DNA of 64,000 bases from Phallusia mammillata (taxonomy: Eukaryota), in assembly GCA_965637545.1 (NCBI GenBank), contig OZ281496.1:8246001-8310000 (forward strand). The letters run 5' to 3'. A program made the translations under genes and the position numbers. The first letter of the stretch is position 1; each line of letters begins with the position of its first letter. This document shows, one piece after another, positions 1,908 through 41,825 of the stretch. The notes under the pieces were generated by a model. That model saw nothing but the letters and a program-made list of their open reading frames with translations. It did no database searches and had not been told where the DNA came from.

Positions 1908-2023
1908 CTGCATTACATGAAACGTTGATACATTTGTTTTGAGCTAAATTGATTTGGTTATCAGCCTAATAACATCATCAACCTTAAACAATTCCTTTTT
2001 TGCAATACTGCTGTTACCTTTAC

Positions 2024-16947: not shown

Positions 16948-19900
16948 TTATCGATAAAATATCATAATTGTCGAATCCAAATCTCTCTGAGAATGAGCAT
17001 ATTCAACTGGAGTCGTTTTGTTCAACGTAGTTTCTGGCAATCCGTTCCAATCTATTTTTAAATTACAATTTTTGACAGACACAATGTTACGGTGTTAAAC
17101 AAAACAATTACTTGTAAAGTCATTGCAGTCTTCACAGTTGGAAAATCTGGATTGTTCATTCCTCCAATACACACAAACTCACTTCGCCAATCGTTCACTC
17201 TGAACAATTTACGTTTTTTTATAAAGTAATATTTAAAATAATGAATACTTCAGGTGTGACATTTAGCAGTAATTTTGTTTGGAAAAGAATCTTTTTTACA
17301 TATTGCTGGGTCACAAAGCTTTCAAATCAGACGTATTAATTTATGGTTTGTTTGGAAAAGAGTTCCAATGTCGACGCTAAGGATTTTTTGATGAGCAATT
17401 ACACTTGCAACACTTTTGTTCTGACTGTAATTTTTTGTATTGCAGTTGAACCTACGCCATTATGTTAACTACATTTTTTTTTTAAATGTAACAATATTAT
17501 AAAAGTCAGGTTGGATATTAACTTTGTTAAAGTATCACTAGATGGTATAGGCACCATAGATCTTATCGATTTAACGGATTTTGTTAACCCTTGACAAAAA
17601 AGTTTTTTTCAGTCGGTTGAAAGTACAATATATCAAAAAAAGCTTACATGAATACTGTCTATTTTAGTAATAAACCCGTTTTAGGTATATTTGTATGACA
17701 GCTGCACTAACTTAACAGCAGGACACATTGCATAGACGCTTCCATGTTTTCCATAAGCACGAAAATGAACAAAACCGGTAGGTAGAGGCTTCACACTTGG
17801 TGGCAGCATCGAGTTAACCACAGAATCGTTTCCGATCGAAAATTGAACTGGTACTGAAAGCACGTCTTCCTCATAAGAGCAATCTGGACCTTAAAAAATA
17901 AATCAGTAGGTTTGTCACCAATAAATCTAGTTATAGAATACACGCTAGAGCCAGATAGTTAAAAAAACAAACAATAAATCCAATGATTTTTAGATCAATT
18001 CAGTTATTATTGAAAAATCTTTATTAATTAACAAAAGCTTGGTAATACAACAAAGACCGTTTGCGTAACGTTGGTGGTTGCAAAACTCACAAAAATCACT
18101 TTCCGAAATTACTTCCAATATTTTGTAGGTAAAAGCGTTGACCTCTGTTTCTAATATTAAATCTCCAGTTTTCCTAAACACAGAATTAACATGACTAGCT
18201 GTTTTACTTAGTTTCAAGCGTTTTCATCACCAGTATACCTGGAAATCATTGTGTAACCAAGTAGAGTGTTGGACAACGGTGTATATATTTTCAACCCATA
18301 AAAGTATGATTTGCTAGTTGTACTAGTTTTCAATTCTAGCTTTGGGTTTCCTGATGATTTCCATGTCTATGTATAAAAGACAAGTTTATTAAAAAACTCC
18401 GTAAAATTGGTTTATCTGTCAAGTTTGGAATCGAAAATATCATTTTCTGGGCTGCGCCCCCAAAGTTAGATATCGTATATTGTTGACGAACTTTTTTGTA
18501 AGTTGAAATAAAATTTGTATTTTCAACACACGTCACATGTCTATACCCTCTGGTCAAATAAATAAGCGAATAAGTACCCGGTGATTATTGTAAAAGAAAC
18601 TTTCAATGTACCTGTGTGTTAAAAATGTAAAACATAATGTCACAGAAGCTGGCAGTTGTTGATCTGTTTCTACATGATGGTTCATAATGTAAAAAGAAAT
18701 TGTCGAGAGTGTGATTTCCTTCGTACCAAAGGATCGAAAACCATGTGGCTATAGACACCAAAATCATGGAATAATTTAAACTGGGCAATATGCAAGTGCT
18801 GCATTCACTTACCCCAAAAGAGACATATTTCAAAGAGGGATCAAAATCTCCTATAGCAAACAAGGCAAAGAATGGATGCATTTTTCGACTCGATTGCATT
18901 ATATTGTCCTGATCACATCTTTATTGTATACAGGAAAAGTAAATCACGTGGTACAACAAAAAAACATCCTACATTTCACCAACCTATGATCTAATCCGTA
19001 ATGTGCATGGTGATTAGGACACCTTGTTTTGTAATTAAATGAACAAAATAGACAATCTTGACAATATGGATGATTCGGATTATATGCTCCTCTTGCGCTA
19101 AAATCGACCTGTACAAACACATTTTTTAGTCGAACAAACATGGCAATTTTGTTAACTTACCCTCATTCCGTAACGTTCCCCGACAATTCCCTATCGTGCA
19201 GCTCATAAGCATGAGTACCATAGTCATAAAAATAGTAGTCAGAAATTAAATTTGTGAAGTCTGTAGATTTTTCCTCAAGTCTATCCAACATCGATTTTAC
19301 ATCGGGATAAAACTCTTAAATTAAAAACAAAACCGTCAACCTATTACACAGCCATAAATTGTTGGAAGTACCATTCCCTTGCTGTAATGGATAATGAAAA
19401 TTGTAAATTTTATGCAAATTCCCCCCATAATTTTGCGTAAATCCGTTCACTGATTGATATTGCAAAATACTCATCTCTCTGCTGACCTCCAGTGGTGTTA
19501 GGTTTTGAACATGACGTAAGATTATGTCTTGTTCCTAAACAAGCACAATGTTTCAAAGCGTTTCAAACTATTTTGCATTTTACAAAATTTTTTTTACATG
19601 GTATTCGAAATAAGCCTGGCTTTTAAAATCCATTTTTGTACAGGTATCAAATGTTCCAAAAGTGTTTGTGTTCATCCAATTCTAAAGTTCTGAAAATTAA
19701 AACTTAAAACAGTTTTTAACCTTTGGGCAATCTACCTTACCCAAGACTGCACTATTGTTGCTTGAAGTCAGAAACCACAAATTACTATAAGATTCTACAT
19801 AAGTAAAACTATTGTTGTTGATAGTTGCCGCGAAAATCCATCCACCACCAGCAGCTTTCATGTCAAAATAAGCCTTGACAAAATGTAAAAAAAGATAGAC

Positions 19901-22298
19901 GGATACTAATGTTTTTGGAAAAGGTTGCTCATTGTACATAAGATAATCAAACATTTATGAAATGCCTAAATGCAGTTTTGTTTCCTTATTCCGCTCACCG
20001 GAACAATTAAAGAAGTTTCAACATATACACAAGAAAAAAAATACAAAGTGCACCTTACAAAGACAAAAAGTTTGATCAGAAAAGATCTCAATGTCCATTT
20101 TGAAGCTATTTTGATTTACGAAAAACAAAAATTAAAAACGAAATCGATTATTAACCACACAAACTGTTTCTGTATAATACCTACTTCAAGCGATTTGTGT
20201 AACGATTGTATAACGTAGATTCCATCTTGAAACCCAGCATCTGTCAGTTCAACACATGAACGGGCAGAGTTAGGGAAAGTACCAAGCGGTGGTTTTATTG
20301 TCATGTGTTCTGTTGCGTTAAAAGCTGGGTGTTCAAATGTCTGCGGTCCTCCAAAGCCATCTAAAATCGTTAAGGTATGATATAACTTATTTTGAAACAG
20401 TATTTTATTTACTTACTTGGTTGTTTATAAAGAATAAATATGCCAAAAGTTAGTCCCAAAGCAGCCAGGACTCCAACCACACACACCAAAATTATAATCA
20501 CATGTAACAACTTCTGATTCTTTGGATGCTTTTCCGGGCGCATGGTAACAATTTCTGTTAAAAAAACATTAGTACATGTCGTTTCCTATCCAGGTTTGCA
20601 CCATATCTGATATCTGCCTTGATTAATACGTTTGGGAAACGTTAAACCAACAAAGGGCCAAAATCATTCTACAGCTGTTTTAACTAGATTTAAACCGAAT
20701 TCTGGTCTCCGTTATTAATTTTACCACATTGTACGCATCAATGCAGGTTAACTCACTTTTTGAAAGAAATGAAAGGTGTTGCGATTTTGACACATGCTAA
20801 ATATTATACTGGGTAAAGAAACGTTTGTCAGTTAAACCCACTGTAAACGCGATGTTTAAACGGTTGTTCTGTGTTTGCCACTTTCATATAAGCGTGGCAC
20901 ACATCGAAACATTATCGGCCAATCGTTACTACGTCATGCTGCAGTAAAGAGAAACTGCAATCGATCGTTATGGTGTGGTTAAGATTTAAAAAAACGACAC
21001 TGAGACCAACCTTACCTAATGCACTACTTTTTTGTTTGTAGTTGTTTCTCCAGTAGTAAATTTTCCATTTTTTCCGCCTTGCTTTATTTTATACGCACTT
21101 ATTGTTGTGTTATGTTTGTTCGATTTTTTGAACCTTGATTTTTATGTACATCACAGCACACCAACCAGGTTACCATTTTGTACGAAACCCCAGCCGTTAT
21201 CATGTGGTTGATTTGTTTTTACCTAGGTTTACTCAACAATATATTTGTTTTGAATATGAATTCTAGGTATAATTCAACAAATATTTGTCCACAGCAAACC
21301 AAAATATTTTTGTAATTGTCTAAAAGCCCTTGTTATAAGGTTGCACATACAAATCGCCTAAAGCCCTCATATACAGTATACATTGCTAAGTTGACTTATT
21401 TGCGCTGAATAACGTTGCAAAGTTGCGCAGCTATTGAGGACCTAATGATTGTTAATGTAAAACTATTTTGTGAACTTTCAACAAGTGAAATCAATCGTTT
21501 AAACATCACAATGCAACCACCGAATATCTCAGCATGTATTAAAGCCTGTAATATTGTGTAGTAGGATTTGAGGTTTTGTCTGTATCACTGCTGGTTTTGT
21601 CTGTAAATATTTAGGACATTAAAAGATATGAAATGTAATGCGAGTGCTTTAAATTAAACCTGATTGAGAAACTTTTGTAAGTTAAGTCGACTATGACACG
21701 CAACATTAAGTGACTGCCACTTAAAAGGTCACATGACTCACATTAGCTTGCCCTACATCAAAACAATAATGATTGTACTTTTGGCTAATCGTTACTACGT
21801 CACCCTGCAGTGTCGAGAAACTGAATCATTGTTAAAGCCGCTATGGTGTGGGTTGGATTGTAATAATCAACACTAAAATGAATCCCAATTTTTGCACTAG
21901 CACCTCGTCTGCACGAATTTTCCCCTGGTAAATTTTTCGCTTTTTTTCGTATTGCCTTTTACGCACTACTTGATATTTTATGTTTGTTCGATTTTGTAAA
22001 GCTTATTTTATGTGTACGTCACAACACGAATTAGGTGATCATTCTGCTTAAAACCCTAGCTGTTCTTGTGTAGAATTTCTTGTAAGTTTTAAAACTTGAG
22101 TTGTACACACCCTGGGATGTACTATATATATCCTGATGACGACGCCTCGAACCAGACATCTAGTTTTAGGCTGAGTTATTTCAATTTCACTGGAAAGAAT
22201 ATACCTGATTGATTTGTTTCCACTTCCGGAATGTTTTTTCGCTGAAGCTCAATAACTTCGTAAGATACAGGATCATTATTTACATAATTATTAGACAT
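16948..22298 (-). pseudogene. Type II TM split-intelectin receptor, copy A (probable pseudogene)
   Basis: Exons are collinear with copy C: first exon 22205-22298 (MSNNYVNNDPVSYEVI...), TM exon ~20418-20555, then RSC..L...G..DG, YFDM..GGGW, NWMNTNTFG, GPDC...FRAYG and IMIFYR*. Lesions: in-frame TAG at 19682-19684; exon 19161-19314 is 154 nt versus 155 in B/C; exon 17112-17199 is 88 nt versus 89; frame disrupted near 18740. Confidence 0.8.
20915..22060. repeat. Diverged ~300-bp direct duplication (~20915-21210 and ~21780-22060) in the intron after copy A exon 1
   Basis: Shared blocks aatcgttactacgtca, gagaaactg, tatggtgtgg and ttatgtttgttcgatttt. Confidence 0.65.
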
Positions 22299-24426: not shown

Positions 24427-24523
24427 CTGGTTTGCTTTTAAGTTTTAATTTCAACGCTTGTCCTTCTTTAATTCCGACCGTTTCGTAAGTGTCATCACCA
24501 TGATTTACGTAAATATGCGCCAT
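24427..24523 (-). pseudogene. Orphan first coding exon (copy D) of the split-intelectin receptor family
   Basis: MAHIYVNHGDDTYETVGIKEGQALKLKLKSKP with a phase-1 GT donor. It is 97 nt, the same as copy C exon 1 (MAHTYVN...). No matching TM or lectin exons were found before copy A. Confidence 0.7.
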
Positions 24524-25340
24524 AACTAACATAAATTTACAACCTAAAAAGTGTTCTGTTAAAATGTCCATGAATGCAAAACAAACAGAATTAGATGCGA
24601 TTTATAATTATTGTGAGATTTTCAGTTTCATTTACTGTCAACAAATCTAGTTCCTGTTTGGTTTATGTCCTATTGTGGCATCGAACATATGGGTTTGGGC
24701 ATGCTTTTTAGCCTGTTTTTGCCACAAAACGCACGTAGCAGAAACGAACCAAAAAAGGGACCAAAAACCACGTTATACATTACATTATATGTAACAAATG
24801 CTTTGACAACAGCTTCACTGCTGGGTCATTATAAATTAAAACAGTGTGCTCTGACTTTCGCTTAAATATCTTTACTTTGTTGTTAAAACTCTGTCCAAGA
24901 CTGTCTTGTGAAAACAACACTTTCTTTAACATTAGTTGCAATACTAACTTCAAGTTAAACTAGGAATTTAAAAAAAAGTTGTTAGTGAAGGGTTACAGCT
25001 TTTAGTAACGGACACAACGTATCTGCAGCAACAATATGTGCCAGCTTAAACCGAAAGTCTTCGGTCGTTGTGTTACACAAGATGTGTAAAGTTTAATTGG
25101 TAGTAAACCCTTACAAACGGGTATTGTTACATTCGGTCAATGTCAATAGAGATTCCGAAATGTCGATAATAAACAGCGTTTGTGTTAAGCAATTGAACAG
25201 CCTGCGTATTTCTTGATCGCAGACAAAACCGACTTGAAATTGTACTTACGTGCTTGTGTAATAACACTCTTAATTTTACTTTTGCGAATATCTATTTGCA
25301 AATACACAGCAGTTTAAATACAGTTGCAGAACCTTTAAAC

Positions 25341-25880
25341 CAGGGAGTCGAACCGCTTGTCATATGGGTTCAGGTTCGGTTCGGGTTCACTTGGTTTTGT
25401 TTTTAAGGGTTCGGGTTCAGGTCCGGTTTTTAAAAATGTATATTTTCGGGTTCGGGTTTTGTTCTGGTTTGGGCAAATTATCCGGTCCGAACCGGTTTGC
25501 GGTTTTTAAACCGGTTCAAATTTTTATTCGTTTTAATTTAATTCTACCCATCAACTACCTGGCCATATCAAACGCCAAAATAATTTTGCCCGTGTGCTGT
25601 TATTTTTGACACGCCCTATATAGCGCACTGAAGACTACGCGAGATAACACATATATATGTGTGCGCTGTTTTGAACAAAAAATCATAAAATATAAAACAG
25701 ACTGCATTTTTTACTGGTTCGGTTCCGGTTCAGGTCCAACGCCAAACAAAATATAGGGTTCAACTCCGGTTCGGGTTTTAAGAAAATCGTAGTTAGCGGT
25801 TCGGGTTCGGTTCGGGTTTAATGAAATTAACCGCTCAAACCGGTTTGCGGGTTCGGGTTCAGTTCCGGTTCGACTCCCTG
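25341..25880. mobile_element. Young hAT-type MITE
   Basis: Perfect 15-bp TIR CAGGGAGTCGAACCG / CGGTTCGACTCCCTG, perfect 8-bp TSD CTTTAAAC (25333-25340, 25881-25888) and many GGTTCG/AACCGG subterminal repeats. Confidence 0.92.
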
Positions 25881-27250
25881 CTTTAAACAAAGAGATATCT
25901 GAAGATTGTGGTAATTGATTCAATACATTTTTTTGCTTTTCTTTGTAAACAAACCAAGTTGAAGAATAAAAAGGCATTGTAAAAAAATGCAAATGTTTGT
26001 TTTGCAACTCCTCAGAACGCGTTTCTCTCCTCTTGCAACCAAGCAAGGTAGCACGAACAATTATCAAAGTGTCAGGAAGAGTCGTAAACCTCCAGCCAAC
26101 ATCAAGCATCATGCTCAGAGGAACCCGCCGCGTCTCAATTGTAGTATATGTACTGCCGAAGCAAGTATCGCATTTGAGGTTTTGTCATACCTGGTTGACG
26201 TATTTATGACACACACTATCGAAATGATCCCTAAAAGTATGATCTTAACGTTTGCAAATTAGTTCAGCAATAAGAATGAGGTGAAATTGTTTATGATTGT
26301 GGTGTGCTAATAATTTACATGCTTTGATTTCATATTCAACTTCACTTGTATTCGTTGGGTTCAAATTCCATCACGGTTCAGAAATTCAGAACCACGTCTT
26401 GCTACACTTTATTAGTTGAAATCTTGTCCCTAATTACAGGAATTCATTTACTTATACGCACATACAAACATTTGGTGATAGTATTATTTGAAACCATATT
26501 TCGAAATGTTGCTTTCTAAACGTGAAAAATCATAGATTGCAAAATTATTTCAGAAAAATGTTATATAGTTCATGCTTTACTACTTTACACTATTGTTTTG
26601 TGTTTACTGCCCACCCTTTTTTTCATGCAACAGTGTCTGCTTCATTTGGATTACGTTTTCAAGATACTTAGTGTAGGAATGATCTCCAAAAACACCTTTG
26701 TTTACGAATTTAGCAACCGATTGTATCTAAACTTTAACGGCCAGATATCCCAAATCTTTGCTCACTTGTTAAGAACGTTTTGTAGATTGGTTTTCAAGCT
26801 ATACAAGCAAATCGGGTTGCTGTGTCGAATGTATACGCCGTAAAATATTTATCGGTTGTAAATCTGATCCGATCTTTTTTTTAATTTTCACACAATCCAG
26901 GTTTACTTCAAGATAGTTTTATATTTACTTTGTCATGTATTGTATGCTATTATTTTTTCGGTTCAATTTGAAAAAAGTTTGGAATTTAAGAATGACAAAA
27001 AGTTTTCATCAAATTTAATAAGGACTGTGTTAAATTTTATATTGTAACTAAACTAATTGAACAAGCAACGTCTCTTTGTTTGTGGACATGTGTTTAACTC
27101 GGTTATATTGTACTGTAATAACAGCTGCGGGTGGTTTTCATCATAACAAAGTGTCAAAAAAGTCCGGAAACAAACGGTTGTTAAAAACTCGATTGTCGAG
27201 TTATATTCTAGTAATGGTTTGATGTTTCCTGTTCGTCAATTCCACTGAAA

Positions 27251-27397
27251 TCAGATACAATACGTGAGACGAGATCGGTTACAAATCCTAGCAAAACAAG
27301 TGTTATTAAGTCCTGGCCTGAACGGACTCAAAATATTATCTGCCTTTACATTTGCAACAAGAAAGAACATGAGAAAAACTAAAATATTCAAAGGCAT
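27251..27397 (-). CDS. Possible small secreted peptide, or first exon of an unknown gene
   Basis: MPLNILVFLMFFLVANVKA-DNILSPFRPGLNNTCFARICNRSRLTYCI*. The N-terminus resembles a signal peptide with a V-K-A cleavage site. No other support. Confidence 0.3.
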   Translation of the reverse strand: MPLNILVFLMFFLVANVKADNILSPFRPGLNNTCFARICNRSRLTYCI

Positions 27398-27728: not shown

Positions 27729-30700
27729 TTATCGATAAAATATCATAATTGTTGAATCCAAATCTCTCTTAGCATGAGCATAATCAACTGGAATCGTTTC
27801 GTTCAACAAGGTTCCTGGTAATCCGTTCCAATCTATATTAATTAACACAAACTAAATATATTACTAAACAACTATAAAATGGTATCTTTAATTAAATCAC
27901 GCTAAATTACTGGTGAAATCATTGCAGTCATCCAAGTAGGTAGAATCCGGGTTTTTCATTCCTCCAAAACAAACAAATTCGCTTCTCCAATCGTTAACCC
28001 TAAATAAATTACGAGAATGAAATCCTGTAAATTATTAAACTAATTATTAGGTATAAAAATAAACTGTGTCAACTACGTTTTTTTTAAAACGTTTTTTTTT
28101 AACAGAAGTGTCGCAATGTCACATAGCCATTTGTTCAATATTGCTGCAGAAAACGTAAACCAAATATACAATAAACGAAACTAATAAAAAAGCTTCATAA
28201 ACTATAGTATTTAGGGATCCAACCAAGTCAAATGACGACCCATTTGGTATTCAGATCAGGGGATTGGGGTGCACCGCACTGAACGAATGGATGCACGATT
28301 GGGTGTAACAGAATAGCGATAACCTTGTTAGCGATGGGGTGCTTGGTTTAGGCACGAGTATGTCCAACTACTTACTTAACAGCAGGACACAATGCGTAGA
28401 CGCTTCCAGTTCTTCCATAAGCACGAAACTGAATAAAACCGGTCGGGAGAGGTTTTACACTTGGTGGCAGCATCGAGTTAGCCACTGAATCGTTTCCGAT
28501 AGAAAATTGAACTGGTACTGAAAGTACGTCATCATCATAATAACAATCCGGACCTGAAGCAAAAAAAAAGAAAACGTGTGAAAGCCTTTTGGTTACTGAC
28601 TGGAAATGCACCTGCGATTTTAGAACCGGATTAATCGCGTACATTTTTGATATATTCACATGAATATCACTTCATAAAAAATTGAAACAATGTGCATCAT
28701 CTGTTAGTAAAAACTTTCGTTAACAAAACAAACAATGCTTTTAGATAGCATAGGATTTTTTTACTCACAAAAGTCAGTTTCTGAAATAATTTCCAATATT
28801 TTGTAGGTAACAGCGTTGATCTCTGTTTCAGGTATCATGACACCACTTTTTCTAGAAATAAAGTCAAAAATAACAACAGAATTTCGATGTCTGTGTTAGT
28901 AATACCACTACACACTGAGCAGTGAACAACAATTTACCTTGCAATCATTGTGTAACCACAAAGTGTGTTGGATGCAGCTTCACGAATTGTCCATCCAAAA
29001 TAATAATGAGTTGAATATGTGCTGTTGTACAATTCTGTGGTTGGCATTCCAGATGGCTTCCAAATGTATGTCGTAAACATTAAAAAATAGTAAGTCCTTT
29101 AACAAACGAACTCCTAAATGCTTAAGTTTAAACAAGGGGAAAATCATACAGCTAAAAACGCAAAGACTAAATTAATTTTCTGATGGTGCAAAAAAGTTCA
29201 AAGGTGGCAAACCCAACATACCTCATTTTTAATGACGTAAAACCAAACATCACACAAGCTTGCATTCAAAGTCCCGTTCCTACATTGTGCTTCATAATGG
29301 AAAAATAAATTGTTAAAGGTGTGATTTCCGTTGTACGCAACTGTTGAATCAGTATCTGGTCGATAAGCAAGAACCTAAAATATTAAAAGATTACGTGCAT
29401 TGTTTTATTTAACAATGTACGACCGCACTATTTCCTTACCCTTAATTTGAAATAGTCGAAACAGTTGTCAAAGTTTCCCATAACAAACAAGGCAAAAAAT
29501 GGATGCATTTTTCGACTCGATTGCATCGTGTTGCCAAGATCGCATCTTTATTGTTTGGCAGTAAAGTAAATATAAGATACAACAAAAAGGCAGGATATTT
29601 TTTACCAACCTATAATCCAATCCGTACGGAGAACATTTTCGATGTGTGTAGGTGTAAATCTGTATCATCCATTTTAGTTTTTTTTTAAAAACAAAAAAAT
29701 AGAATTTCAATAAGCAAACTTACTTCCATTCCATACCTTTCACCATACAGATTATTATCATGCAACTTATCAACTTGAGAACCATAAACATAGAAATAGA
29801 AATCAGTAATTACACTTGTGATTTCTATAGACTTAGCAGCACGTCGATCCAACATCGAATATACATCGGGGTAAAAAGCTAAAAAGTAGGAATGGAAATT
29901 ATGACTTCGGACCAAACCTACACAGCTTAACTATTTGTAAATCGCTTTAAAAAAATTGACTCCTATTGCAAGTTAGTTTATGTTTGCTTTTGTATCAGTC
30001 AGAAATGCCATCCGTGAATTATAAAAATATATAAAATTCTTCCTACATTTACATTTAAAATGCTTTTTTTACATTATAAGTTTTTTTTTACAGTCAGGTT
30101 TTGTGTCAGAAGTCCTGCAGGCAATCGGTTATACCTATTTATGAAAACAAAAACCATAACAGAAAACATTTTTCTCACTAATTTTTGGTTTCAGTGAATA
30201 GTGGTGATTAAAAATTCTATGCAAATTTCCTCCATAAGTTTCTAAAAATCCATTTGCCGATTGATATTGAAGGAAACTCTGCTCTCTGCTGACTACCAGT
30301 GGTGTTTGGTTTAAAACATGACGCAGCATTATGTCTTTTCCTTGTAAATTTTCTTAGTAATAAGATCAAAACAAATGTCTTTTTACAAACAATTTTTGCC
30401 TGATATTCAAAATAAGCTTGATTTTTAAAATCTGATCTTGTACAAGTAGCAAATGTTCCAAATGTATTTGTGTTCATCCAGTTTTGGTAATCTGAAATTA
30501 AAATGGTGGTCGGTGTTTGGATATCATGCTGTAAATCTAGTTTACCGTAAACAGCTTGATCTTTGTTTGACGTCGTAAGAAACCACATATCAGCATAAGT
30601 TTCTGTAGTACTAAAATTATTGTCGCTAATAGTGGCCGCGAGAATCCATCCACCACCAGCAGCTTTCATGTCACAATAAGCCTGAGGACAAGAGAAATGG

Positions 30701-33067
30701 AAACTAAGGTGATGTTACACCCAATGAGGACAAATACCGATTACTATGCTCCATTTTTTTGTTCACACAGATGTTATAAATACGACATACTCCAAAGTGA
30801 AATTTCTTGTCCTTTCAATTAAGAAGTCGACCCTAACCAACTACATTGAGTTCACATAATTGCAAATCACTTCAAAAAATACGCGTATCTTTCATGTTAA
30901 TCTTTCACAACAAGCTTTGGAAACAAGACCGACACCCCAATAAACTACTTGATACTTGAAACGATTTGAGTGATGGTTGTATGACGTAGATTCCATCTTT
31001 GAATCCAGCATCTCTCAGTTCAACACAAGAACGGGCAGGATTGGGGAAAGTACCGAGCGGTGGTTTTGTAGTCGCAGATTCAGTTGTATCGTAAGTTGTT
31101 TGTTTTGTTATATGTGCTGCTATCACCATGCAAAGACATTCTCAATTAGGAAGTAGGAGAAAAATAATGTAACTGCCAAAATGTCCATTTGTTAAAGTAT
31201 AATCTGTTCCTTTAGCCAATGTTCTCTTAGTGGTCTAAAAGAGTCCATTACGTAACCTCTGACAATCGGTTACCATGAAAACGTGGCTGCGGTCTATCGT
31301 TTGAAGCAACAATATTGGAAATTTGTAAATACACTCCCCAATTATTCTTTACACAAATGAAAACAAGAAGAAAGTATGAGGTTCTATAAATACCGAATGC
31401 TTATTATGACCAGAACTTAAGGGGGTCGATTAACAGAGTTCAATACACTCATTAGACCATGCAATTTGTTAAAACTCGATCAGAATATAAGAAAGAAAGA
31501 TCAGAAATGTAGTGCAGACTTAACCTCACAGCTTATACCACAAACACTTGAAACGTGAACCAATGCTTGATTTTAGAAAATAATTAACTTCAACACAATA
31601 AAGGAAACTTTTTTGTGTGACAAAATCGTTATAAATTAGACGTAGTTTCAATTGTTCTTTGCTAAAAAAAATCTCGTCGGCAAGAACAGTTTTGAAAAAC
31701 AAATAGTAAAGGCATTTTGTTGCAAACACTTTTACAATGTTTGACTTACCTTGGGAAGCTTCTTTGTTTGCTTTCTGAAATAGCAAACATAATAAGTCAA
31801 TAGCATTAGGACACAAAGCACACTTCATTTAGTTTATGTGACATTACACACCTGGTCTTTTTGGAAATGAAGTATTCCCAAAACTAGTCCCAAAGCAGCC
31901 AGGATTATAACTGCAAACACCAAAATCTTATTCATGTTAAAAGTTTTTTGATGACATGACGAATTTTTACTTTGTTTGCCGCTTGATTGTGTTGCAACAA
32001 CCTCTGCATAATAAGTACAGCATTCTATAGATTAGATAATTATGTAGACAACACAAGCTTTTATTAAATATGCAAGAAAAAATCTAATTCAACAGTTTTA
32101 TGCAAAACAAAGGCTAGAAAAAGTTATAAAATTAAAATTCAAGAGCCATATCAAATTGAGTATAAATTTTAGTTGCCTTTACTGCACTGTGATTTGGGCA
32201 TACATGGTAATACGGAACATAACACAAAAAAAGTATGAAAAACCTACCAAAATCTTGCACAGTTGTTACTGTGGGTCTAATTGCATCAATATTTTCTTCA
32301 CGTACACGTTTTCTTCACGCTGAAGGTTGAGCAAACATGTTTGTTAATACTCTTTGATCATCTTGTTCTGAAAACAAAAGTATTGAAGTTAATATTTATT
32401 TTTTACCCCACAAATTTTGGTCTGTTTTATTTAATTGAAGAAGTACACGTATGGTCGCATTTTAGACTTCAACATTTGATTATGTTGTTTGTTAAGCACA
32501 ACAAGTTGTGATGAACAATACCTATTTTGTTTGAACACTCAAAAGCACAGCAAGCTCAAATCTATGCTTTAGGGTAGGGGTGCATAACATGCAGCCACGT
32601 AGACGAATTTATGTGGCCGTAAACATGTGTATCAAAGTTCACGTACTGGCGACCGTGAATGGATTAAACCTCTTTTGCAGGACATTAAGCTTTTGCTGGA
32701 ATGGAAACATTTAGTTTTTGCTGACATGGAAAAACATATTATATCGCCCCAGACTTATTGTACGCATACTATTTGCAAACAAATTAACAAACAAGCAAAC
32801 ACACAACGTAACAATATACAACGGGGACATTTGGTCGTTGGTAAAATATACGATTTGTCCGTAATGGCGAAACGGTTGTGCACTTCCGATTTAGGGCTAA
32901 ATTTGGTAACATTTAATTGCAACCTTTTTCATAAAACAACACATATCTGTTCAAATAAAATGTTTACCTGTTTCCTTTGGAATAGTTTGAGCTTGTCGAA
33001 GTTGTTCTTCATTAAATTCAATTGATTCGTAGGTCACAGGGTCATTATTCACATATGCCTGAGACAT
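27729..33067 (-). pseudogene. Type II TM split-intelectin receptor, copy B (probably disabled)
   Basis: All 17 exon equivalents are present: first exon 32968-33067 (MSQAYVNNDPVTYESI...), TM exon 31852-32003, microexon 31750-31774, last exon 27729-27832. Lesions: in-frame TGA at 32315-32317 in exon 2 (skippable, phase 1-1); exon 8 acceptor one base out of phase (~30340); exon 13 acceptor is AC instead of AG (29067). Confidence 0.75.
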
Positions 33068-34777: not shown

Positions 34778-37700
34778 TTAGCGATAAAATATCATAATTG
34801 TTGAATCCAGGTCTCTCAGAGAATGAGCATAATCAACTGGAATCGTTTCGTTCAACAAGGTTCCTTGATATCCGTTCCAATCTACATTAAACAGAAACAC
34901 ATTTTTTAAACAAACAAATGTTGAGAAAACTATTATTTACTTGTAAAATCATTGCAGTCATCTAAATAGGGAGAATCTGGATTCTTCATTCCACCAATAC
35001 AAACAAATTCGCTTCTCCAATCTTTCACCCTAAATAAATAACAAATATTTTTGCTGCACGAATGCGTTAGTCAAAACGTCAAAGTATACAATAAGCGGTA
35101 CTCCGTTGTCGAATAGCTTCATGAACTATTGCAATCGACGACCCAACTAAATAACCACTCATTTTTAAATCGACACTTGGGAGTTTGGGTGCGCCGCACT
35201 AAACGATTGTTTAAATGCACGGATTATTCAAATATGGAAGGGTGTGATTGGAAAACATGGAGATGCCTCGTTTAACGAGAACGGTCGGTATTTGTTGCAG
35301 CTGTGCTGTAGCAACGGACTTAGCATCATGAACACCTTTTTCCAACACAGAGATGTTCACAAGTATACTTGGTATAGACCTAGTTTGGGGCAAAGATCTT
35401 TGATAGATTTTTACATTGTGTCGACTGACTTATTTTCTGATGTGTTGGACGTTCGAGTCAAACGCAGTGCTGAATTGTCAACTGATCACCACCTAGTGGT
35501 ATGTTCCTTACGATTTTGCGATCCTTGGCATAACAAGAAAATCCGTAAGTCAACCGTGGCATATAGGATCAAATGGGAGGCTTTGGAAGACAAAGAAGTA
35601 AGGAAGAAGTTTGCATCGAGCATGTCATCAAAGTTCAGACAACTTCCAGATGTATCTGAGGACATTGAGATGGAATGGGAATCATTCAAAACAGCCATAA
35701 TTTCTTCTGCTGCGGAAAGTTGCGGGCGAAAACGACTCAGAGTAACGAAGAACAAAAAGAAAACACCTTGGTGGAATGAGGATGTGAAACAAGTGATTAG
35801 TGCAAAGAAGGAGGCTTATAGGGCTTTGTTGCAACACAGGTCTTCATCTGAATTACAATCGCGTTACTCGGAAGCGCGGAGAGCTGCCACTTTAGCAGTT
35901 AAAAAGTCCAAAGAGAAATCTTGGGAGGAGTTTGGTCGACAGTTGGATTCCAACTACACATCGGCAAATAAAGTATTTTGGCAGACCATACGCCGTTTGC
36001 GTGGTAAGAGATCAAATGCCACAAGCTACATCAAAGACACAAATGGAAACATCATTCGTGAAGAAAGGGATATACTTGCACGATGGAGAGAATACTTTAA
36101 AGACCTTTTGAACCCAGTAAAGGCAACGCCAATTGATACACAGCAAATAGTCCAACCAGGAGAAGAGGAAGTCTTCACAGCAGTCGAAGTTGCAATAGCA
36201 GTACGAGGGCTAAAATCCGGAAAGGCAGCTGGTGAAGATGAAATCCGACCTGAAATGTTGAAAGCTCTTGGACGGGAAGGAATTCTGTGGTTAACACAAG
36301 TGTGTCAAGTGGCGTGGAAACTTGGCAAGACACCTAAAGACTGGCAAACGGGCGTAGTTATTCCCATTTTTAAAAAAGGCGATCGTAAGGAATGCACGAA
36401 CTACAGAGGAATATCGTTGCTTAGTTTGCCAGGAAAGGTGTATGCCAAATGCCTTGAACGAAAATGCCGAGAAATAGTGGAAACAAAACTGGAGGAGGGC
36501 CAGTGTGGTTTTCGTCCTGGTCGCAGCACTACGGACCAAATCTTCACATTGAAGCAAGTCTTCGAGAAATCATGGGAATATGCCAAAGACGTATTCGCAT
36601 GTTTCGTCGACCTTGAGAAGGCATTTGATCGGATTCCTCGAGAAAAGCTTTGGGGAGTACTACAGGAACATGGCATCAATGGCCAGCTGTTGCTGGCCAT
36701 AAAATCATTTTACAATCAGCCCGAGGTTTGTGTTCGCGTGAACGGCAAACAAACTAAACCATTCCATGTGGGGGTTGGTCTTCGGCAAGGATGTGTATTG
36801 TCACCACTCCTTTTCGTTATCTACATGAACTGGATTGACAAGTGCAGCCTAACTGATGATTGTGTCACGATTGGAAGCTTTAAAATTAGTCGTTTGCTTT
36901 TTGCAGTGATGGGAGACAAGACACCGAAATTGATTTTAGAACTGGAAAAGCAAGCTCTGTGATAAGGGCATTGCAGTTTTCGGTTGTCATGAAACGAGAA
37001 TTGTCAAAGAAGGCGAAGATGGCGATATTTAAAACCATCTTCATTCCCATACTCACTTATGGTCATGAGGCGTGGATCATGACCGAGAAGGTGCGATCAC
37101 AACTACAAGCATCTGAAATGAGGTTTTTGCGTAGGGTTGAACGGGTTACTTTACTTGACAAAGTACGTAGCTCCGAAATCCGCAAATCTCTGAGCGTCGA
37201 TCCTCTACTTCTCAAAATCGAACGATCCCAGCTGAAATGGTTTGGCCATGTTAACAGAATGCCTCAGAAAAGGCTTCCCAAACAATCTCTGTTTGCAAAA
37301 CCAAAAGGGAAGCGGCCCACTGGACGACCTCGAACTCGATGGTTAGATCAAGTTAAAAGCCTGTCCTGGAATCCCTTGGGAATTTATCCGGATGAACTGA
37401 AGGAAGTGGTGACTGACCGTGAAGTGTGGAGGCTCAATCGTGAGCTGCTGCCCCCGCGACCCTTAAAAGGATTAAGCGGGAAAGAAAAATGATGAATGAT
37501 GATGATTATTCAAATACATGAGTTATTAGCTCAAGAACCGTAATCTGGTTAGGTGCACGGTAGTAAGTTATCCACGAGTGCACCTAACTACCAATGTGTA
37601 AAAGCATTCTTACTCACTTAACAGCAGGACACATTGCGTAGACGCTCCCAGTTCTTCCATAAGCACGAAACTGAACAAAACCGGTCGGTAGAGGTTTTAC

Positions 37701-40700
37701 ACTTGGTGGCAACATCGAGTTAACCACTGAATCGTTTCCGATTGAAAATTGAACTGGTACTGAAAGCACGTCATCATCATACAAGCAACCTGGACCTGAA
37801 ACAACAAGCTTTTTCAAATTGTTGTAAAGCATAAGTTCTCAGTTGCATCAAATTATTTACTCACAAAAGTCAGTTTCTGTAATGATTTCCAATATTTTGT
37901 ACGTTGCAGCTTTAATCTCAGTTTCGGTTATTAAAACTCCATTTCTCCTACCAATTAAAATCGATTTTAGAAAAGTATTTTATTACAATGTTTGTTAGTA
38001 CAATGCCAAACCCTTCCTATTACCTTGAAATCATTGTGTAACCAAAAACTATATTTGATACAGCATTTTTAATTGACCATTCGAAAAAATAACTATTGCC
38101 GACGGGGTTGTATAAACTGATAATAGGCGTTCCAGATGATTTCCAAAGCTAAAAAGAAAAAAGTTAGAAATAAAAAAAAATACTAAGTTTTTATTAAGTT
38201 ATATCTTTTATTTATATAGGCAATCTTATAATATTTGTTTAGAAGAAAATAATGCAGGAAATATTTTCGTCTATGCTATCAAATTCAGAATTTGCAAATG
38301 TGTGTAAACTGCAGTGTAACTCAAGTAACAATTACCAAAAACAATTTTTAGTTTTTTATTGATTATCAGAAATTAATCGACAATCTTTTGGCTTTAAAAT
38401 AAATTTGAAGGTACGTATTAAAAACAATTCCAGTCATAACTGTATTATATTACCTGCGTAAACTCCGTGACTTGAAACTATCTACTGATATTAGGTAAAA
38501 CAAAGGTAAAACGTACCTCTGGATTATTGACATAAAACCAAACATCACACAAGCTGGCATATGACGTTCCATTTCTACATTGCGATTGAAAATGCAAAAA
38601 GAAATCGTTGATAGTGTGGTTTCCCTCGTAGAGAACTACTGAATCAGTTACTGGTCTTTGACTGTATAACTAAAACGAACAAAGTTTAAATGGATAATTG
38701 AAAAATGTCATAACGCAGTATAAACGTACTTCGAAATTCATGTAATCAAAACAGTGGTCAAAATTTCCGATACCAAACAAAGCAAAAAAGGGACGCATTT
38801 TTCGACTTGAACTCATTATGTTTCCAATGCCGCATCTTTTACAGTTGATTATTTAGTTAAATTTTAACAACAACAAAATTGCAATTTAAACATACGTAGC
38901 ATCCAAATCATAATACACATAACGATTATAATGATCAGAACAATCTATTTGATATTCGTATGGATAATTGCAACGATGTCTTGTGTAGAATCTGACCTGA
39001 ACAAACACTTTTGTTATAATTTCCTTGATCATATCAGAATGGCAATAGCATACCCTCATTCCGTAATTGTTTCCAAACAATTGACTATCATCCATCAAAT
39101 AAGAATGAGAACCATAGTTGTAAAAATAGTAATCAGTAATTAAACTCGTGATTTCTGTGGATTTTTTCTCAAGTCGATTCAACATTGAATTCACATCAGG
39201 ATAAAAAACTTTAAGCAAACATAAAACTTGCTTTAGTTTAGAGCGAATTAATTTACCAAAGTTGGGAAGATTCCCTGCATACGTTTTTTAGAGTTCAACC
39301 GCAGGCTAATATACACTTACTGTTAAAATACAGAAATTCATACATAATTATTTAGCGATTGGGACTTTCAACATTTATACTTTAGTGCACTTTAAAGGCA
39401 ATCAGTAATGCTGAGAGGTACATAATCTTATATTTGCAAAAGCTACATTTAAGGGTATTTCTTACCATTCTTGGAACTTATTTGATATCGAGAATTAAAC
39501 ATTTTTTGCATATTTCCTCCATAAAATTGCATAAATCCGTTCTCTGTTTGATATTGCAAAAAACTTTGCTCTCTGCTGATCTCTAGTGGTGTTTGGTTTA
39601 AAACATGACGTAACATAACATCTTTTCCCTGAAATTGATTTTTCCATTGTAAAAAATGGGTTAAGTCACTTTTTATCAATATTTGCCTGATATTCAAAAT
39701 AAGCTTGACTTTTAAAATCTGATCGTGTACAAGTAGAAAATGTTCCAAATGCGTTTGTGTTCATCCAATTTTGGTAATCTGGAATTCAAGAAGCACGTAA
39801 AATGTTTTCTTGCATTAGTACAATATAACTTACCTATAATATTATCGTTGTTGTTTGACGATGTAACAAACCACAAATCACTATAAATTTCTTCTAAACT
39901 TAAATCATTGTCGTTGATAGTTGCAGCGAGAATCCATCCACCACCACCAGCAACCATGTCACAGTAAACCTGTAAACAAAACTCGTTCGTAAGAGTACAT
40001 TTGTTATTCTAAAAGTTGCAATGATGTCATTGATGGATTGTCAGAAAAAAAAGACAGACCATCTTTTTTTACATTAAAGGCAGAATTCTCGTTAAAGGCA
40101 AAATTGTAAACAACTCTCAGACGCCAGGCCCAGTGAAGGCCTTTCACCGACTTAGCCGGTCACCAGATATTTTCCACATAGATTTTTCGGTATAACGCCA
40201 ACAATAGGCCTGGCGTGCTGTCATTTATATATGTGTGTGCCGTGATTGCTGGTGTGCATGAACGCTTCCGGGCTGGTCTGCAATCAAGTAAACATCGTCA
40301 TAAAATATAATTCCACACCTCAAACGATTTGAGTGACGGTTGTATGACGTAAATTCCATCTTTGAAGCCTGTGTCTCTCAGTTGAATACATGAACGAGCA
40401 GGATTTGGGAAAGTACCGAGCGGTGATTTTGTTGTCTCAGATTCTGTTGTGTTCAGAGTTGTTTGTCCTGTTGTCGGCGGTGCTGAGCAATACAGAAATT
40501 AAATTAAATATATCCTTTATTCATGCAAAACTACGACAACTTTGTCTAAGTGGCTCCTTCAGCAAATTTTTTATTCAGTTGTGTTTACAGTTGTTTGTCC
40601 AGTTGTCTGTGGTGCTGAGCAACAGAAACACTATTTTTAATGAAACTTTTAGTTCTACAACACTGCACTAACTTTATTTAAGTTTTCAACCTCCCGTAAT

Positions 40701-41825
40701 TATACTTGGAAAGTCGTTTATTCTTACATTTGTGTCAAAAAGAAACATATAAGACTTACATTTAGATTAAAATGTTTGATAACAGCTGACTGCATAATGG
40801 CTGGTTAATATTTTTTGGATATGTTTAAACCCAAACATTTATTTTCAGTCAAGCTTAAAGTTAAAAACGTTTACAAAAATCAGTCTGAAGTACTCGTCAG
40901 AAACTCGATTATGGTTTATGACTTACTGTGATCAGTTGCTTCGTCTAAGTTCTGAAACAATAAAACGTGCAGTTTGCAGTCAAACGCAACAAGTGTAACA
41001 AGTTAACTGCACCTGTTTTCCTGTGAAATTGAGTATCCCGAAAACTAGACCCAAAGCAGCCAGAATACCAACTGCGCACACCAAGACTACAATCCAGTTT
41101 GATGTGTTTGGTTTTGCAAAAAAAATTCTTGGACATTTTTTACCTGACTGCGTGTCGACAGTTTCTGTATAAAATAGAAGTCATTGTTTCTCTAAACGTA
41201 GCCTCTCCACCACAAAAAAACAGGAACTTTGTTGCATTAAAACCTATTGAAATAGGATTAGACTTAAAAATAAACTGTTTGAAATAAATTAACTGAGTTT
41301 GCAGGAGAAAACTGTTTTTTTTTGCGCTACAGTGGTCATAAATGATGCAACAACCGTAGTTTAAACACAGTTTAAAATATTGTTTGGTAGCACTCAACAC
41401 AGATTTAAAATGTACTGCGAGTGTTGTTTTTTTTATCAAGCATTTACAAAACAACTTACCAGAACTGTGTACAGTTTTAGGTGTTGGTGTTGTTTTAATG
41501 GATTCTTCATATACGTCTGTGGAAGATTCCACGTACACATTTGAGAAGGGCCCCTGTCGTTCTGGTTTGAAGGGGAAAAGTCACAGTAAATATTCGAGAG
41601 TAAGTATTTGTGGTTTGTGTTATGTTTCGACAAACATTTTAAATATGTTACACAGCATTTTGGACAGATGTAAACAAAAAAATTGAAGAGATTTTTTGCA
41701 AAGTTAAAAATATCCTTTAAAATATTACCTCGTTTCTTTCTGTTTGCTGCAGGCTGGTAACGACCTTGTTTGATCTCAATAGTTTCGTAGTCACCAGCAT
41801 CATTGTTCACATAAGTATGAGCCAT
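34778..41825 (-). CDS. Type II TM split-intelectin (fibrinogen-related) receptor, copy C, intact, 674 aa
   Basis: Exons 41729-41825, 41460-41561, 41013-41164, 40927-40951, 40319-40482, 39834-39969, 39687-39778, 39466-39628, 39054-39208, 38896-38996, 38730-38835, 38517-38669, 38024-38148, 37865-37947, 37618-37795, 34941-35029 and 34778-34881 splice into one open frame of 2025 nt. No signal peptide; TM is WIVVLVCAVGILAALGLVFGIL. Intelectin motifs in order: RSC..L...DG.Y, YCDM..GGGW.L.A, NW.N.N.FG, DFK...Y, L.Y....GF...GGN, GF.QFR, CIGG, C.DF, IFYR*. Confidence 0.85.
35235..37503 (+). mobile_element. 5'-truncated RTE-clade LINE (Expander/Rex3-like), antisense in an intron of copy C
   Basis: APE C-terminus plus RT (GLRQGCVLSPLLF) in 35244-36962 and RTE-type C-terminus (GRPRTRW) in 36959-37492. 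Short ATGA/GAT tail and 13-bp TSD GATTATTCAAATA (35222-35234, 37504-37516). An internal deletion near 36908 removes the catalytic FADD and shifts the frame. Confidence 0.9.

What the first reader, a model, noticed from the sequence alone, without database searches (positions are those of the whole stretch)
16948..41825. Tandem family of membrane-anchored intelectin-domain receptors with signalling tails (best candidate for an undescribed system)
Seen: three collinear gene bodies plus one orphan first exon. Intact copy C encodes about 90 aa of N-terminal tail with no signal peptide, one hydrophobic helix, a Thr-rich stalk and a C-terminal domain with intelectin motifs in order, ending IFYR*. 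Established: the intelectins I know (human ITLN1/2, Xenopus XL35/XEEL, ascidian plasma lectin) are secreted with signal peptides. Type II topology with tyrosine motifs is the design of NK-complex C-type lectin receptors, and FIBCD1 is a type II receptor with a classical fibrinogen domain. Inference: this is a polymorphic innate-immune or allorecognition receptor family that uses an intelectin fold as its sensor. I know of no description of it, but novelty needs a search.
Basis: partly seen in the sequence, partly recalled or inferred. Interest (0 to 1): 0.9.

Follow-up and report, generated by a model that had tools for sequence, protein, structure and literature searches.

The report
Membrane-anchored split intelectin receptor genes
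Three neighbouring sea-squirt genes (one clearly intact) encode a sugar-binding intelectin domain, interrupted by an extra module, that is tethered to the cell membrane with a short inner tail carrying conserved tyrosine motifs; such genes sit unnamed in several sea-squirt genome annotations, and I found no paper on them.

Summary
On the minus strand lie three collinear multi-exon genes (A 16948-22298, B 27729-33067, C 34778-41825) and one extra first exon (24427-24523).

Copy C splices into an intact 670-aa ORF. It has an 89-aa tail without a signal peptide, one strong hydrophobic helix, a short Thr-rich stalk and an intelectin domain ending IMIFYR. A 241-aa six-exon module interrupts that domain.

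Copy A is probably a pseudogene. Copy B has lost one canonical splice acceptor.

The nearest proteins are three Phallusia mammillata 'uncharacterized' proteins with the same tail-helix-lectin order. Membrane-anchored relatives are annotated in Styela, Ciona and Clavelina.

A model of a Styela relative superposes on solved intelectins across both halves.

The tail start (Tyr5 in YVN, Tyr13 in YE-x-I/V) is kept in all four first exons and in part in Styela, which argues for function. Signalling and endocytic sorting cannot be told apart here.

Nothing supports polymorphism or allorecognition (dN/dS about 0.4). RNA contigs did not show copy C transcribed.

No paper describing such proteins was found. 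This scan has already flagged the same family on other pieces of this genome.

Verdict: a real family, a new variant of known kinds, of moderate interest.

The parts
41729..41825 (-). Copy C exon 1: start codon and cytoplasmic tail with Tyr5 (YVNN) and Tyr13 (YETI)
41460..41561 (-). Copy C exon 2: second tail exon with NVY-x3-STD-x-YEE-x-I, matched in P. mammillata P0003
41000..41164 (-). Copy C exon 3: basic flank and the hydrophobic helix (residues 90-111). The donor is uncertain (41000 or 41013).
40319..40482 (-). Copy C exon 4: Thr-rich stalk and the start of the intelectin domain (first conserved Cys)
39466..39969 (-). Copy C exons 5-7 (39969-39834, 39778-39687, 39628-39466): N half of the intelectin domain, including YCDM..GGGW. 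Intron 6 has a GC donor.
37865..39208 (-). Copy C exons 8-13 (39208-39054, 38996-38896, 38835-38730, 38669-38517, 38148-38024, 37947-37865): inserted 241-aa module, 723 nt, a phase 1-1 cassette
37618..37795 (-). Copy C exon 14: the intelectin domain resumes (GFVQFR). This is the exon most conserved between copies, and the only one well covered by RNA contigs, which come from paralogues.
34778..35029 (-). Copy C exons 15-16 (35029-34941, 34881-34778): end of the intelectin domain with the binding-site region, IMIFYR and the stop codon
35244..37492 (+). LINE-type retroelement fragment (endonuclease and reverse transcriptase) inside intron 14 of copy C, on the opposite strand
40597..40622 (-). 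Decayed stalk-repeat pseudo-exon (reads ..PQTTGQTT) in intron 3 of copy C. It is out of frame with the exon-4 acceptor at 40482.
27729..33067 (-). Copy B: all exon homologues are present. The exon-7 acceptor is changed from CAG to CAA (30342-30343), so the frame stays open only through shifted splice sites. Exon 2 is doubtful.
16948..22298 (-). Copy A: probable pseudogene. It has a 1-nt deletion in exon 15 at about 17143/17144, YCDM changed to YFDM, a stop before the exon-8 donor, and no exon 2.
24427..24523 (-). Orphan first exon (97 nt, phase 1, GT donor, YVNH and YETV motifs), 2.2 kb upstream of copy A's own first exon. It is either an alternative 5' exon of A or the relic of a lost copy.

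Best explanation
This is a tandem cluster of ascidian genes for single-pass, N-terminus-inside (type II) membrane glycoproteins. The species is most likely Phallusia mammillata or a close relative.

Anatomy. Outside the cell, a short mucin-like Thr-rich stalk carries an intelectin (X-type lectin) domain. That domain folds from two halves around an inserted beta-supersandwich module of about 240 aa. Inside the cell, an N-terminal tail of 50-90 aa begins with a conserved pair of tyrosine motifs: Tyr5 in Y-V-N and Tyr13 in Y-E-x-I/V.

Proposed mechanism (inferred). The ectodomain binds a glycan or another multivalent surface ligand. Clustering then lets the tail tyrosines be used in one of two ways: as phosphotyrosine docking sites (pYxN for a Grb2-type SH2, pYExI for Src/Syk/SHP-type SH2), or as a YxxPhi sorting signal for uptake.

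What is shown: the gene anatomy, the family relationship, the fold of a relative, and the conservation of the tail motifs. What is inferred: topology, ligand binding and signalling.

Within the cluster only copy C is clearly intact.
For: - Gene structure and an intact 670-aa ORF for copy C.
- Similarity between copies is confined to exon islands. dN/dS is 0.19-0.67 by region.
- There is one strong hydrophobic segment far from the N-terminus, with four K+R on the N side against one on the C side. Seven N-x-S/T sequons and 14 Cys lie on the C-terminal side.
- The best relatives carry the same tail-helix-stalk-lectin order: P. mammillata P0074, 54% identical over 616 aa, plus P0001 and P0003.
- Helix-anchored relatives are annotated in Styela clava, Ciona intestinalis and Clavelina lepadiformis. 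A helix-anchored, unsplit intelectin with a collagen-like stretch is annotated in amphioxus.
- The AlphaFold2 ectodomain model of Styela P0096 (pLDDT 88.9) matches XEEL, human intelectin-1 and lamprey LSVL at TM-by-target 0.85-0.88 across both halves.
- HMMER splits the match to those structures exactly at the insert.
- The tail start is conserved in all four first exons and in P. mammillata while the rest of exon 1 diverges. Tyr5 and Tyr13 recur in Styela P0034 and P0036.
- YxN lies within the first 30 residues in 10 of 17 tails, against 1.7 in shuffled tails.
- The insert-bearing proteins form one clade (SH-aLRT 99). A subclade with helix and Tyr tail spans the window genes, Phallusia and Styela.
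- An RNA contig from the same organism joins insert exons 11-13 to exon 14 and to an exon-15-like sequence in a paralogue.
Against: - There is no RNA support for copy C itself. The four RNA runs covered only the conserved exon 14, by contigs that diverge elsewhere and so come from paralogues. No contig links the tail or helix exons to the lectin exons at this locus.
- Topology rests on hydropathy and charge only.
- The structure model is of a 30%-identical relative, not of the window protein.
- Intelectin-1 binding-site residues are only partly kept: W288 is kept, E274 is S (with D just before it), and Y297 has no counterpart because the loop is 7 residues longer (residue roles from PMC12800186).
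- The strict ITIM pattern is met in A and B only, and a hemITAM acidic triplet is absent.
- Shuffle statistics on related tails overstate independence.
- Two of the three copies carry lesions.
Confidence: 0.6

Rival explanations
1. It is a purely endocytic or clearance receptor. The Y-E-x-I/V motif acts as a YxxPhi signal for the AP-2 adaptor, and the protein internalises bound glycans or microbes, as FIBCD1 and the asialoglycoprotein receptor do, without phosphotyrosine signalling.
For: YxxPhi is met at Tyr13 in all four first exons. The type II lectin design is shared with known endocytic receptors (established knowledge).
Against: Across the 17 tails, YxxPhi is not enriched over shuffles (6 observed against 3.4 expected, P about 0.11). 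YxN and YE-x-Phi are enriched. Styela tails keep Y-E-T-A, which is not a YxxPhi motif, together with Y-E-N.
Confidence: 0.2
2. It is a membrane-tethered precursor. The helix serves only as a signal anchor, and the ectodomain is shed to give a soluble multivalent lectin like the classical plasma or mucosal intelectins.
For: Sister proteins in the same insert-bearing clade are secreted, with a signal peptide and a collagen-like stretch (P0094, P0097). All reviewed intelectins are secreted proteins of 313-339 aa.
Against: A conserved tyrosine-motif tail of 50-90 aa is not expected on a mere anchor. No obvious dibasic cleavage site lies in the stalk of copy C.
Confidence: 0.1
3. It is a polymorphic allorecognition or gamete self-recognition receptor family.
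For: The tandem, lineage-specific expansion has divergent tails and an orphan exon. The −2 residue before Tyr13 falls into two classes: Val in A and B, acidic or Gly in C and the orphan exon.
Against: dN/dS is below 1 in every region. The binding-site half is the most conserved part, at 90% amino-acid identity between B and C. No polymorphism data exist. The known ascidian recognition loci use other domains (from memory, not tested).
Confidence: 0.05
4. The locus is a decaying remnant with no present function; the working genes are the family members elsewhere in the genome.
For: Copy A carries a frameshift and other lesions. Copy B has lost an acceptor. Copy C has a retroelement in an intron and was not seen in the RNA contigs.
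Against: Copy C has a complete ORF with good splice sites across 16 exons. Purifying selection acts in all regions. The RNA runs were small and of unknown tissue or stage.
Confidence: 0.1

Closest known systems
Secreted intelectins / X-type lectins (human ITLN1 and ITLN2, Xenopus XEEL, lamprey LSVL, ascidian plasma lectin)
   Same: The lectin domain is homologous. The conserved blocks YCDM..GGGW, GF-x-QFR, C-IGG and ..IFYR appear in the same order. The fold of a family member matches 4WMO, 4WMQ and 7E1E at TM 0.85-0.88.
   Different: No signal peptide; instead there is a long N-terminal tail and a membrane helix. The domain is split by a 241-aa inserted module. Binding-site positions 274 and 297 are not conserved in the window copies.
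FIBCD1 (vertebrate type II membrane receptor with a fibrinogen-related domain)
   Same: Type II topology with a C-terminal lectin head of the fibrinogen-related superfamily. FIBCD1 chains appear among the weaker fold matches (TM-by-target about 0.32-0.35).
   Different: The head is of the intelectin type, not a classical FReD. No coiled-coil region was seen. The tail motifs differ. There is no close sequence relationship.
hemITAM or ITIM-bearing type II C-type lectin receptors (Dectin-1, CLEC-2, NK-complex receptors)
   Same: The design is alike: a short N-terminal cytosolic tail with a tyrosine motif within the first 15-20 residues, one helix, a stalk and a C-terminal lectin head. This comparison rests on established knowledge.
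   Different: The lectin fold is unrelated. The motif is D-x3-Y-E-x-I/V with no acidic triplet and with I/V in place of L. The strict ITIM pattern is met in only two copies. Any similarity would be convergent.
Unstudied public gene models: P. mammillata CAB3262707 and CAB3262769; Styela clava XP_039273929; Ciona intestinalis XP_002120751; Clavelina lepadiformis XP_076822543
   Same: Same family and architecture: tail (very short and without the tyrosine motifs in the Ciona XP_002120751 and Clavelina models), helix, and an intelectin domain split by the same insert.
   Different: These are other paralogues or orthologues, 25-54% identical to copy C. The source names are automatic ('uncharacterized', 'intelectin-1-like'). 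No functional study was found.

Membership tests
Intelectin (X-type lectin) family | Significant sequence similarity across the intelectin domain | tested here: met
   Copy C against canonical intelectins P0004 and P0051: 38.7% identity over 163 aa, E 4e-32 and 9e-32. Exon 14 alone against XEEL: E 0.019. The relative P0096 against XEEL: E 6.8e-48, in two stretches.
Intelectin (X-type lectin) family | Intelectin fold | tested here: met
   Tested on a relative only. The P0096 ectodomain model (pLDDT 88.9) matches 4WMO, 4WMQ and 7E1E at TM-by-target 0.85-0.88. The window protein itself could not be modelled because a spliced sequence has no reference.
Intelectin (X-type lectin) family | Binding-site residues of ITLN1 (E274, W288, Y297; also N260, E262 and H263, whose roles I give from memory) | tested here: inconclusive
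   By alignment: W288 and E262 are kept; E274 is S with D just before it; N260 is R; H263 is F; Y297 is lost in a longer loop. The roles of E274, W288 and Y297 are taken from PMC12800186.
Intelectin (X-type lectin) family | Secreted, with a cleavable signal peptide, about 310-340 aa | tested here: not met
   The first 30 residues are hydrophilic (mean Kyte-Doolittle −1.23). The only hydrophobic segment is at residues 90-111. The protein is 670 aa. Reviewed intelectins are 313-339 aa.
Type II (N-in) single-pass membrane proteins | One internal signal-anchor helix, positive charge on the N side, glycosylation sites and cysteines on the C side | tested here: met
   Kyte-Doolittle 19-residue mean 2.88-3.2. 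K+R is 4 against 1 in copy C. Seven sequons and 14 Cys lie C-terminal of the helix. No experimental or dedicated topology predictor was available.
hemITAM receptors | A single YxxL preceded by an acidic triplet (DED-G-Y-x-x-L) in the N-terminal tail | tested here: not met
   The window motifs are D-A-G-D-Y-E-T-I, D-P-V-T-Y-E-S-I, D-P-V-S-Y-E-V-I and G-D-D-T-Y-E-T-V. Position +3 is I or V, and there is no acidic triplet.
ITIM receptors | [S/I/V/L]-x-Y-x-x-[I/V/L] | tested here: inconclusive
   Met in copies A and B (V at −2). Not met in copy C or the orphan exon. Met in 2 of 17 family tails against 0.6 in shuffles.
Grb2-type pYxN docking sites | Y-x-N in a cytosolic segment | tested here: met
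   Y-V-N at Tyr5 in all four first exons. YxN lies in the first 30 residues of 10 of 17 family tails against 1.7 expected. Phosphorylation was not testable.

The most novel reading that the evidence does not exclude
Ascidians possess an undescribed class of signalling pattern-recognition receptors. An intelectin head, enlarged by an inserted supersandwich module shared with phage and bacterial proteins, is coupled through a type II anchor to a conserved pYxN/pYExI tail. This would be a convergent counterpart of the vertebrate hemITAM/ITIM C-type lectin receptors. The −2 residue before Tyr13 may distinguish inhibitory-like members from activating-like ones.
Probability: 0.25. Interest if true: 0.75.

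Novelty: new variant of a known kind. Interest (0 to 1): 0.55.

Why it matters
Intelectins are treated in the literature as soluble lectins. Reviews and every reviewed database entry describe secreted proteins of about 313-339 aa.

A tunicate-wide clade in which the same head is membrane-anchored would add a receptor branch to the family. That clade carries a conserved tyrosine-motif tail and has taken up a whole extra domain inside the fold.

It would also give a tractable case of exon-shuffled domain insertion: the insert is a 723-nt, phase 1-1 cassette whose removal restores a canonical intelectin junction.

Finally, it offers a concrete candidate for cell-surface microbial or glycan sensing in the closest invertebrate relatives of vertebrates. 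The predictions are testable by tail peptide pull-downs, glycan arrays and topology tags.

Tried and rejected
- The search for homologous proteins with P0001, and with an 8-sequence family alignment, returned only the three P. mammillata proteins. The word index evidently missed the Styela, Ciona and Clavelina relatives that the exhaustive HMMER search had found.
- The look-up of sequencing runs was run with kind 'any', so no RNA run was selected for holding the gene. The four RNA runs laid gave only paralogue contigs on exon 14.
- The look-up of encoding contigs found no contig for P0074. The Styela P0034 locus showed no tandem array.
- Pfam gives only a short Fibrinogen_C hit in relatives and nothing for the insert.
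- PDB Foldseek on the insert gave no convincing match (TM at most 0.39).
- I considered including the stalk-repeat mini-exon in copy C. It is out of frame with the 40482 acceptor and fits only with a weak acceptor at 40435, so I left it out.
- An ITAM was rejected: the first tyrosine is Y-V-N-N, not YxxL/I.
- The RKKR in copy C's tail was considered as a furin-type site. It lies on the predicted cytosolic side, so I dismissed it.
- The spliced 670-aa protein of copy C could not be given to the structure, PDB or large database tools, because it has no reference and must not be typed. Relatives were used instead.
- The Wesener 2015 and Hayashibe 2017 papers are not held.
Full report
**1. What is in the sequence**

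The window is AT-rich (GC about 0.34 in the region) and has eukaryotic gene structure.

Stop-free segments on the minus strand repeat three times in the same order. blastn between the three stretches finds similarity only in exon-sized islands of 73-92% identity, while the sequence between them no longer aligns. That pattern is what old tandem duplicates under constraint look like. It also argues that the islands coding for the insert are real exons.

A regular-expression scan of all six frames finds exactly four first exons, three helix exons, three GGGW exons, three GF-x-[QH]-FR exons and three IMIFYR-stop exons. tblastn with the spliced copy C protein finds nothing else of the family in the window, apart from the orphan first exon at 24.5 kb.

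**2. Gene models**

I built the models from splice-site enumeration guided by the nearest proteins, then read every junction.

Copy C has 16 coding exons (coordinates under 'parts'):
- Acceptor tracts are good, and 14 of the 15 donors are GT.
- Intron 6 has a GC donor in B and C; A has GT at the same place.
- The P. mammillata proteins read ..EYQ|GKD.. across that junction, as the GC donor predicts.
- The ORF is 2013 nt, or 670 aa.
- Intron 14 holds a LINE-type endonuclease/reverse-transcriptase fragment on the other strand (35244-37492; RVT_1 E 4.8e-25).

Copy A has several lesions:
- A 1-nt deletion in exon 15 removes the conserved ..DDCNDFT.. segment.
- The first Cys of YCDM is replaced.
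- A stop lies two codons before the usual exon-8 donor.
- No exon 2 was found.

Copy B has every exon. Its exon-7 acceptor is CAA instead of CAG, and only a shifted donor/acceptor pair keeps the frame.

The orphan first exon (24523-24427) has the same length (97 nt), phase and GT donor as copy C's exon 1. It lies 2.2 kb upstream of A's own first exon. It could be an alternative 5' exon of A or the remains of a lost copy.

**3. The protein (copy C)**

Layout:
- Residues 1-89: hydrophilic tail.
- Residues 90-111: the only strongly hydrophobic segment (Kyte-Doolittle 19-residue mean 2.88; next best 1.03).
- Flanks of the helix: four K+R before it, one after.
- C-terminal side: seven N-x-S/T sequons and 14 Cys.

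This fits an uncleaved signal anchor with the N-terminus in the cytosol. It is an inference from composition, not a test.

After the helix comes a short Thr-rich stalk. A decayed second copy of the stalk repeat lies in intron 3, and P. mammillata P0001 has three such repeats. The intelectin blocks follow.

Between the block ending ..YQISSKN and the block starting GPGC.. lie six exons. They total 723 nt, enter in phase 1 and leave in phase 1. Skipping them would join ..KN-G-PGC.., which lines up with the human ..KYGEGKC.. junction.

**4. Relatives**

An exhaustive HMMER search with a stop-free piece of copy B found 73 proteins.

The best hits are P. mammillata entries named only after Ciona loci: P0001 and P0003, and then P0074. 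Copy C is 54% identical to P0074 over 616 aa.

All three carry the tail, helix, stalk and intelectin N half. P0001 and P0074 also carry the insert, and P0074 carries the resumed intelectin part as well. All three end by reading into what is an intron in the window genes, so they look like incompletely spliced or early-terminated transcripts. That they derive from mRNA is my recollection of those records, not something I tested.

Helix-anchored relatives are annotated in three more genera:
- Styela clava: P0034, P0068/P0078 (with a tandem double insert), P0085, P0096.
- Ciona intestinalis: P0018, P0039, P0098.
- Clavelina lepadiformis: P0065; and P0072, which has a WSC domain and an unsplit intelectin.

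An amphioxus 'intelectin-1-like' protein (P0051) has an N-terminal anchor and a collagen-like stretch.

A tree of the intelectin columns, with the insert left out, puts all insert-bearing proteins in one clade (SH-aLRT 99). Within it, a subclade joins the window genes, Phallusia and the Styela proteins with tyrosine tails (SH-aLRT 84). The sister subclade contains secreted, collagen-bearing forms.

**5. Fold**

The ectodomain of Styela P0096, modelled with a 37-row alignment, gives pLDDT 88.9 and pTM 0.82. It matches XEEL, human intelectin-1 and lamprey LSVL at TM-by-target 0.85-0.88 over alignments that span the insert. HMMER against PDB sequences splits into two stretches that abut at XEEL residues 174/180.

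The insert modelled alone (P0074:296-540, 14 rows) gives pLDDT 87.9. It is a beta-supersandwich between an N-terminal and a C-terminal helix. Its matches:
- Solved structures: weak (TM at most 0.39, N-terminal domains of GH65/GH92 enzymes).
- ESM Atlas: moderate (GH65 N-domain-like, TM about 0.54).
- Two uncharacterised phage proteins: better (TM 0.72 and 0.58).
- A 234-aa protein annotated 'IgGFc-binding protein N-terminal domain' (organism not shown): TM 0.55-0.58 at 27% identity.

Pfam sees nothing in the insert.

**6. Binding site**

PMC12800186 names E274, W288 and Y297 as intelectin-1 binding-site positions, and W288/Y297 as the aromatic box. PMC8185196 describes the calcium ion that holds the exocyclic diol.

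By the alignments, in the window copies:
- W288 and E262 are kept.
- Position 274 is Ser, with Asp just before it.
- Position 260 is Arg and position 263 is Phe. The roles of 260, 262 and 263 are from memory.
- The loop that carries Y297 is seven residues longer.

Styela P0096 keeps Glu at 274. Lectin activity of the classical kind is therefore possible but not predicted with confidence.

**7. Tail**

The four first exons and two of the three P. mammillata proteins share M-x3-(Y)-V-N-x-D-x3-Y-E-T-I-E. The rest of exon 1 does not align.

Copy C's exon 2 adds N-V-Y-x3-S-T-D-x-Y-E-E-x-I, which P0003 also has.

Styela P0034 and P0036 have tyrosines at the same positions 5 and 13, plus Y-E-N at 19. 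Other Styela and Ciona tails have Y-E-x-x-[IVM]-x-Y-x-N.

In 17 tails (the tails are related, so these counts overstate independence):

| Motif in first 30 residues | Tails with motif | Mean in shuffled tails |
|---|---|---|
| YxN | 10 | 1.7 |
| YE-x-Phi | 6 | 0.3 |
| YxxPhi | 6 | 3.4 |
| strict ITIM | 2 | 0.6 |

Conservation across two ascidian orders is good evidence that the tail start is functional. It does not say whether the function is SH2 docking or sorting. The SH2 preferences quoted (pYxN for Grb2, pYEEI for Src-family kinases) are established knowledge, not tested here.

The −2 residue before Tyr13 is Val in A and B (ITIM-like). It is Gly or acidic in C and the orphan exon. This is probably what another note of this scan read as two classes.

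**8. Selection and expression**

Nei-Gojobori dN/dS between C and B:

| Region | dN/dS |
|---|---|
| Tail | 0.38 |
| Helix and stalk | 0.67 |
| Intelectin N half | 0.34 |
| Insert | 0.35 |
| Intelectin C half | 0.19 |

In the C half, dS is only 0.29 against 0.83 in the insert, so gene conversion is possible there. Nothing points to diversifying selection.

RNA contigs of four runs of the same species label covered essentially only exon 14. The contigs diverge elsewhere, so they come from paralogues. One 615-nt contig is collinear with exons 11-12-13-14 and runs on into an exon-15-like sequence (V-N-D-W-R-S-E-Y-V). This shows that, in a paralogue, insert and resumed intelectin lie on one spliced RNA. 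Copy C's own junctions were not seen.

**9. Literature and earlier notes**

Full-text searches found no description of a membrane-anchored or split intelectin. They combined intelectin with ascidian, Ciona, tunicate, transmembrane, type II and membrane-bound, and also tried the Ciona locus names.

The papers that mention ascidian intelectins treat them as soluble, or use the name as a marker. One comparative paper credits tunicates with 22 intelectins, citing Yan et al. 2013. Two key subscription papers could not be read.

This scan has flagged the same family on other pieces of this genome (s1-368973, s1-392394, s1-395744 and others). One follow-up names the species as P. mammillata and relates the insert to bacterial and phage proteins. 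My phage fold matches agree with the latter. I did not verify the species.

**10. Verdict**

This is a real, ancient, tunicate-wide family of type II anchored, split intelectin proteins. This cluster holds one intact and two damaged members. It is a new variant of known kinds (intelectins; type II lectin receptors such as FIBCD1 and the C-type lectin receptors). It is present but unstudied in public annotation. The receptor mechanism is plausible and testable, but not shown.

Noticed in passing
window 54308-60043 (+): A single 1911-aa open reading frame of a BEL/Pao-type LTR retrotransposon (Peptidase_A17 E 9e-42, RVT_1, integrase zinc-binding domain, DUF5641, DUF1759). It accounts for the GC-rich stretch at 54-60 kb.
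   Followed up: partly
window 35244-37492 (+): A LINE-type element fragment in two ORFs (572 aa and 177 aa; RVT_1 E 4.8e-25) sits inside intron 14 of copy C. It lengthens that intron from about 0.4-0.5 kb in A and B to 2.6 kb.
   Followed up: partly
window 1961-2836 (-): An exon-like ORF with a GPS (GPCR proteolysis site) motif (E 4e-6). This agrees with the adhesion-GPCR gene that another note places at 241-7302.
   Followed up: no
window 39687/39686 and 30400/30399 versus 19598/19597: Intron 6 has a GC donor in copies C and B but a GT donor at the homologous place in copy A. The P. mammillata proteins read ..EYQ|GKD.. across the homologous junction, as that splice site predicts.
   Followed up: partly
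window 27729-28553 versus 34778-37795: The C-terminal intelectin half of copies B and C is much more alike (90% amino-acid identity, dS 0.29) than the insert (dS 0.83) or the tail (dS about 1.5). This suggests gene conversion or stronger constraint there.
   Followed up: no
P0001, P0003, P0074 (P. mammillata proteins): All three public proteins end by reading a few codons into positions that are introns in the window genes (after exons 12/13, 7 and 14). They probably come from incompletely spliced or prematurely ended transcripts.
   Followed up: partly
window 25300-26110, both strands: A low-complexity stretch between the orphan exon and copy B. Its ORFs read as repeated G-S-G / T-E-P-E-P peptides. 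It is probably a simple repeat.
   Followed up: no
P0078 / P0068 (Styela clava): One Styela family member carries two tandem copies of the insert module inside its intelectin domain (phmmer hits at 294-493 and 516-735).
   Followed up: partly
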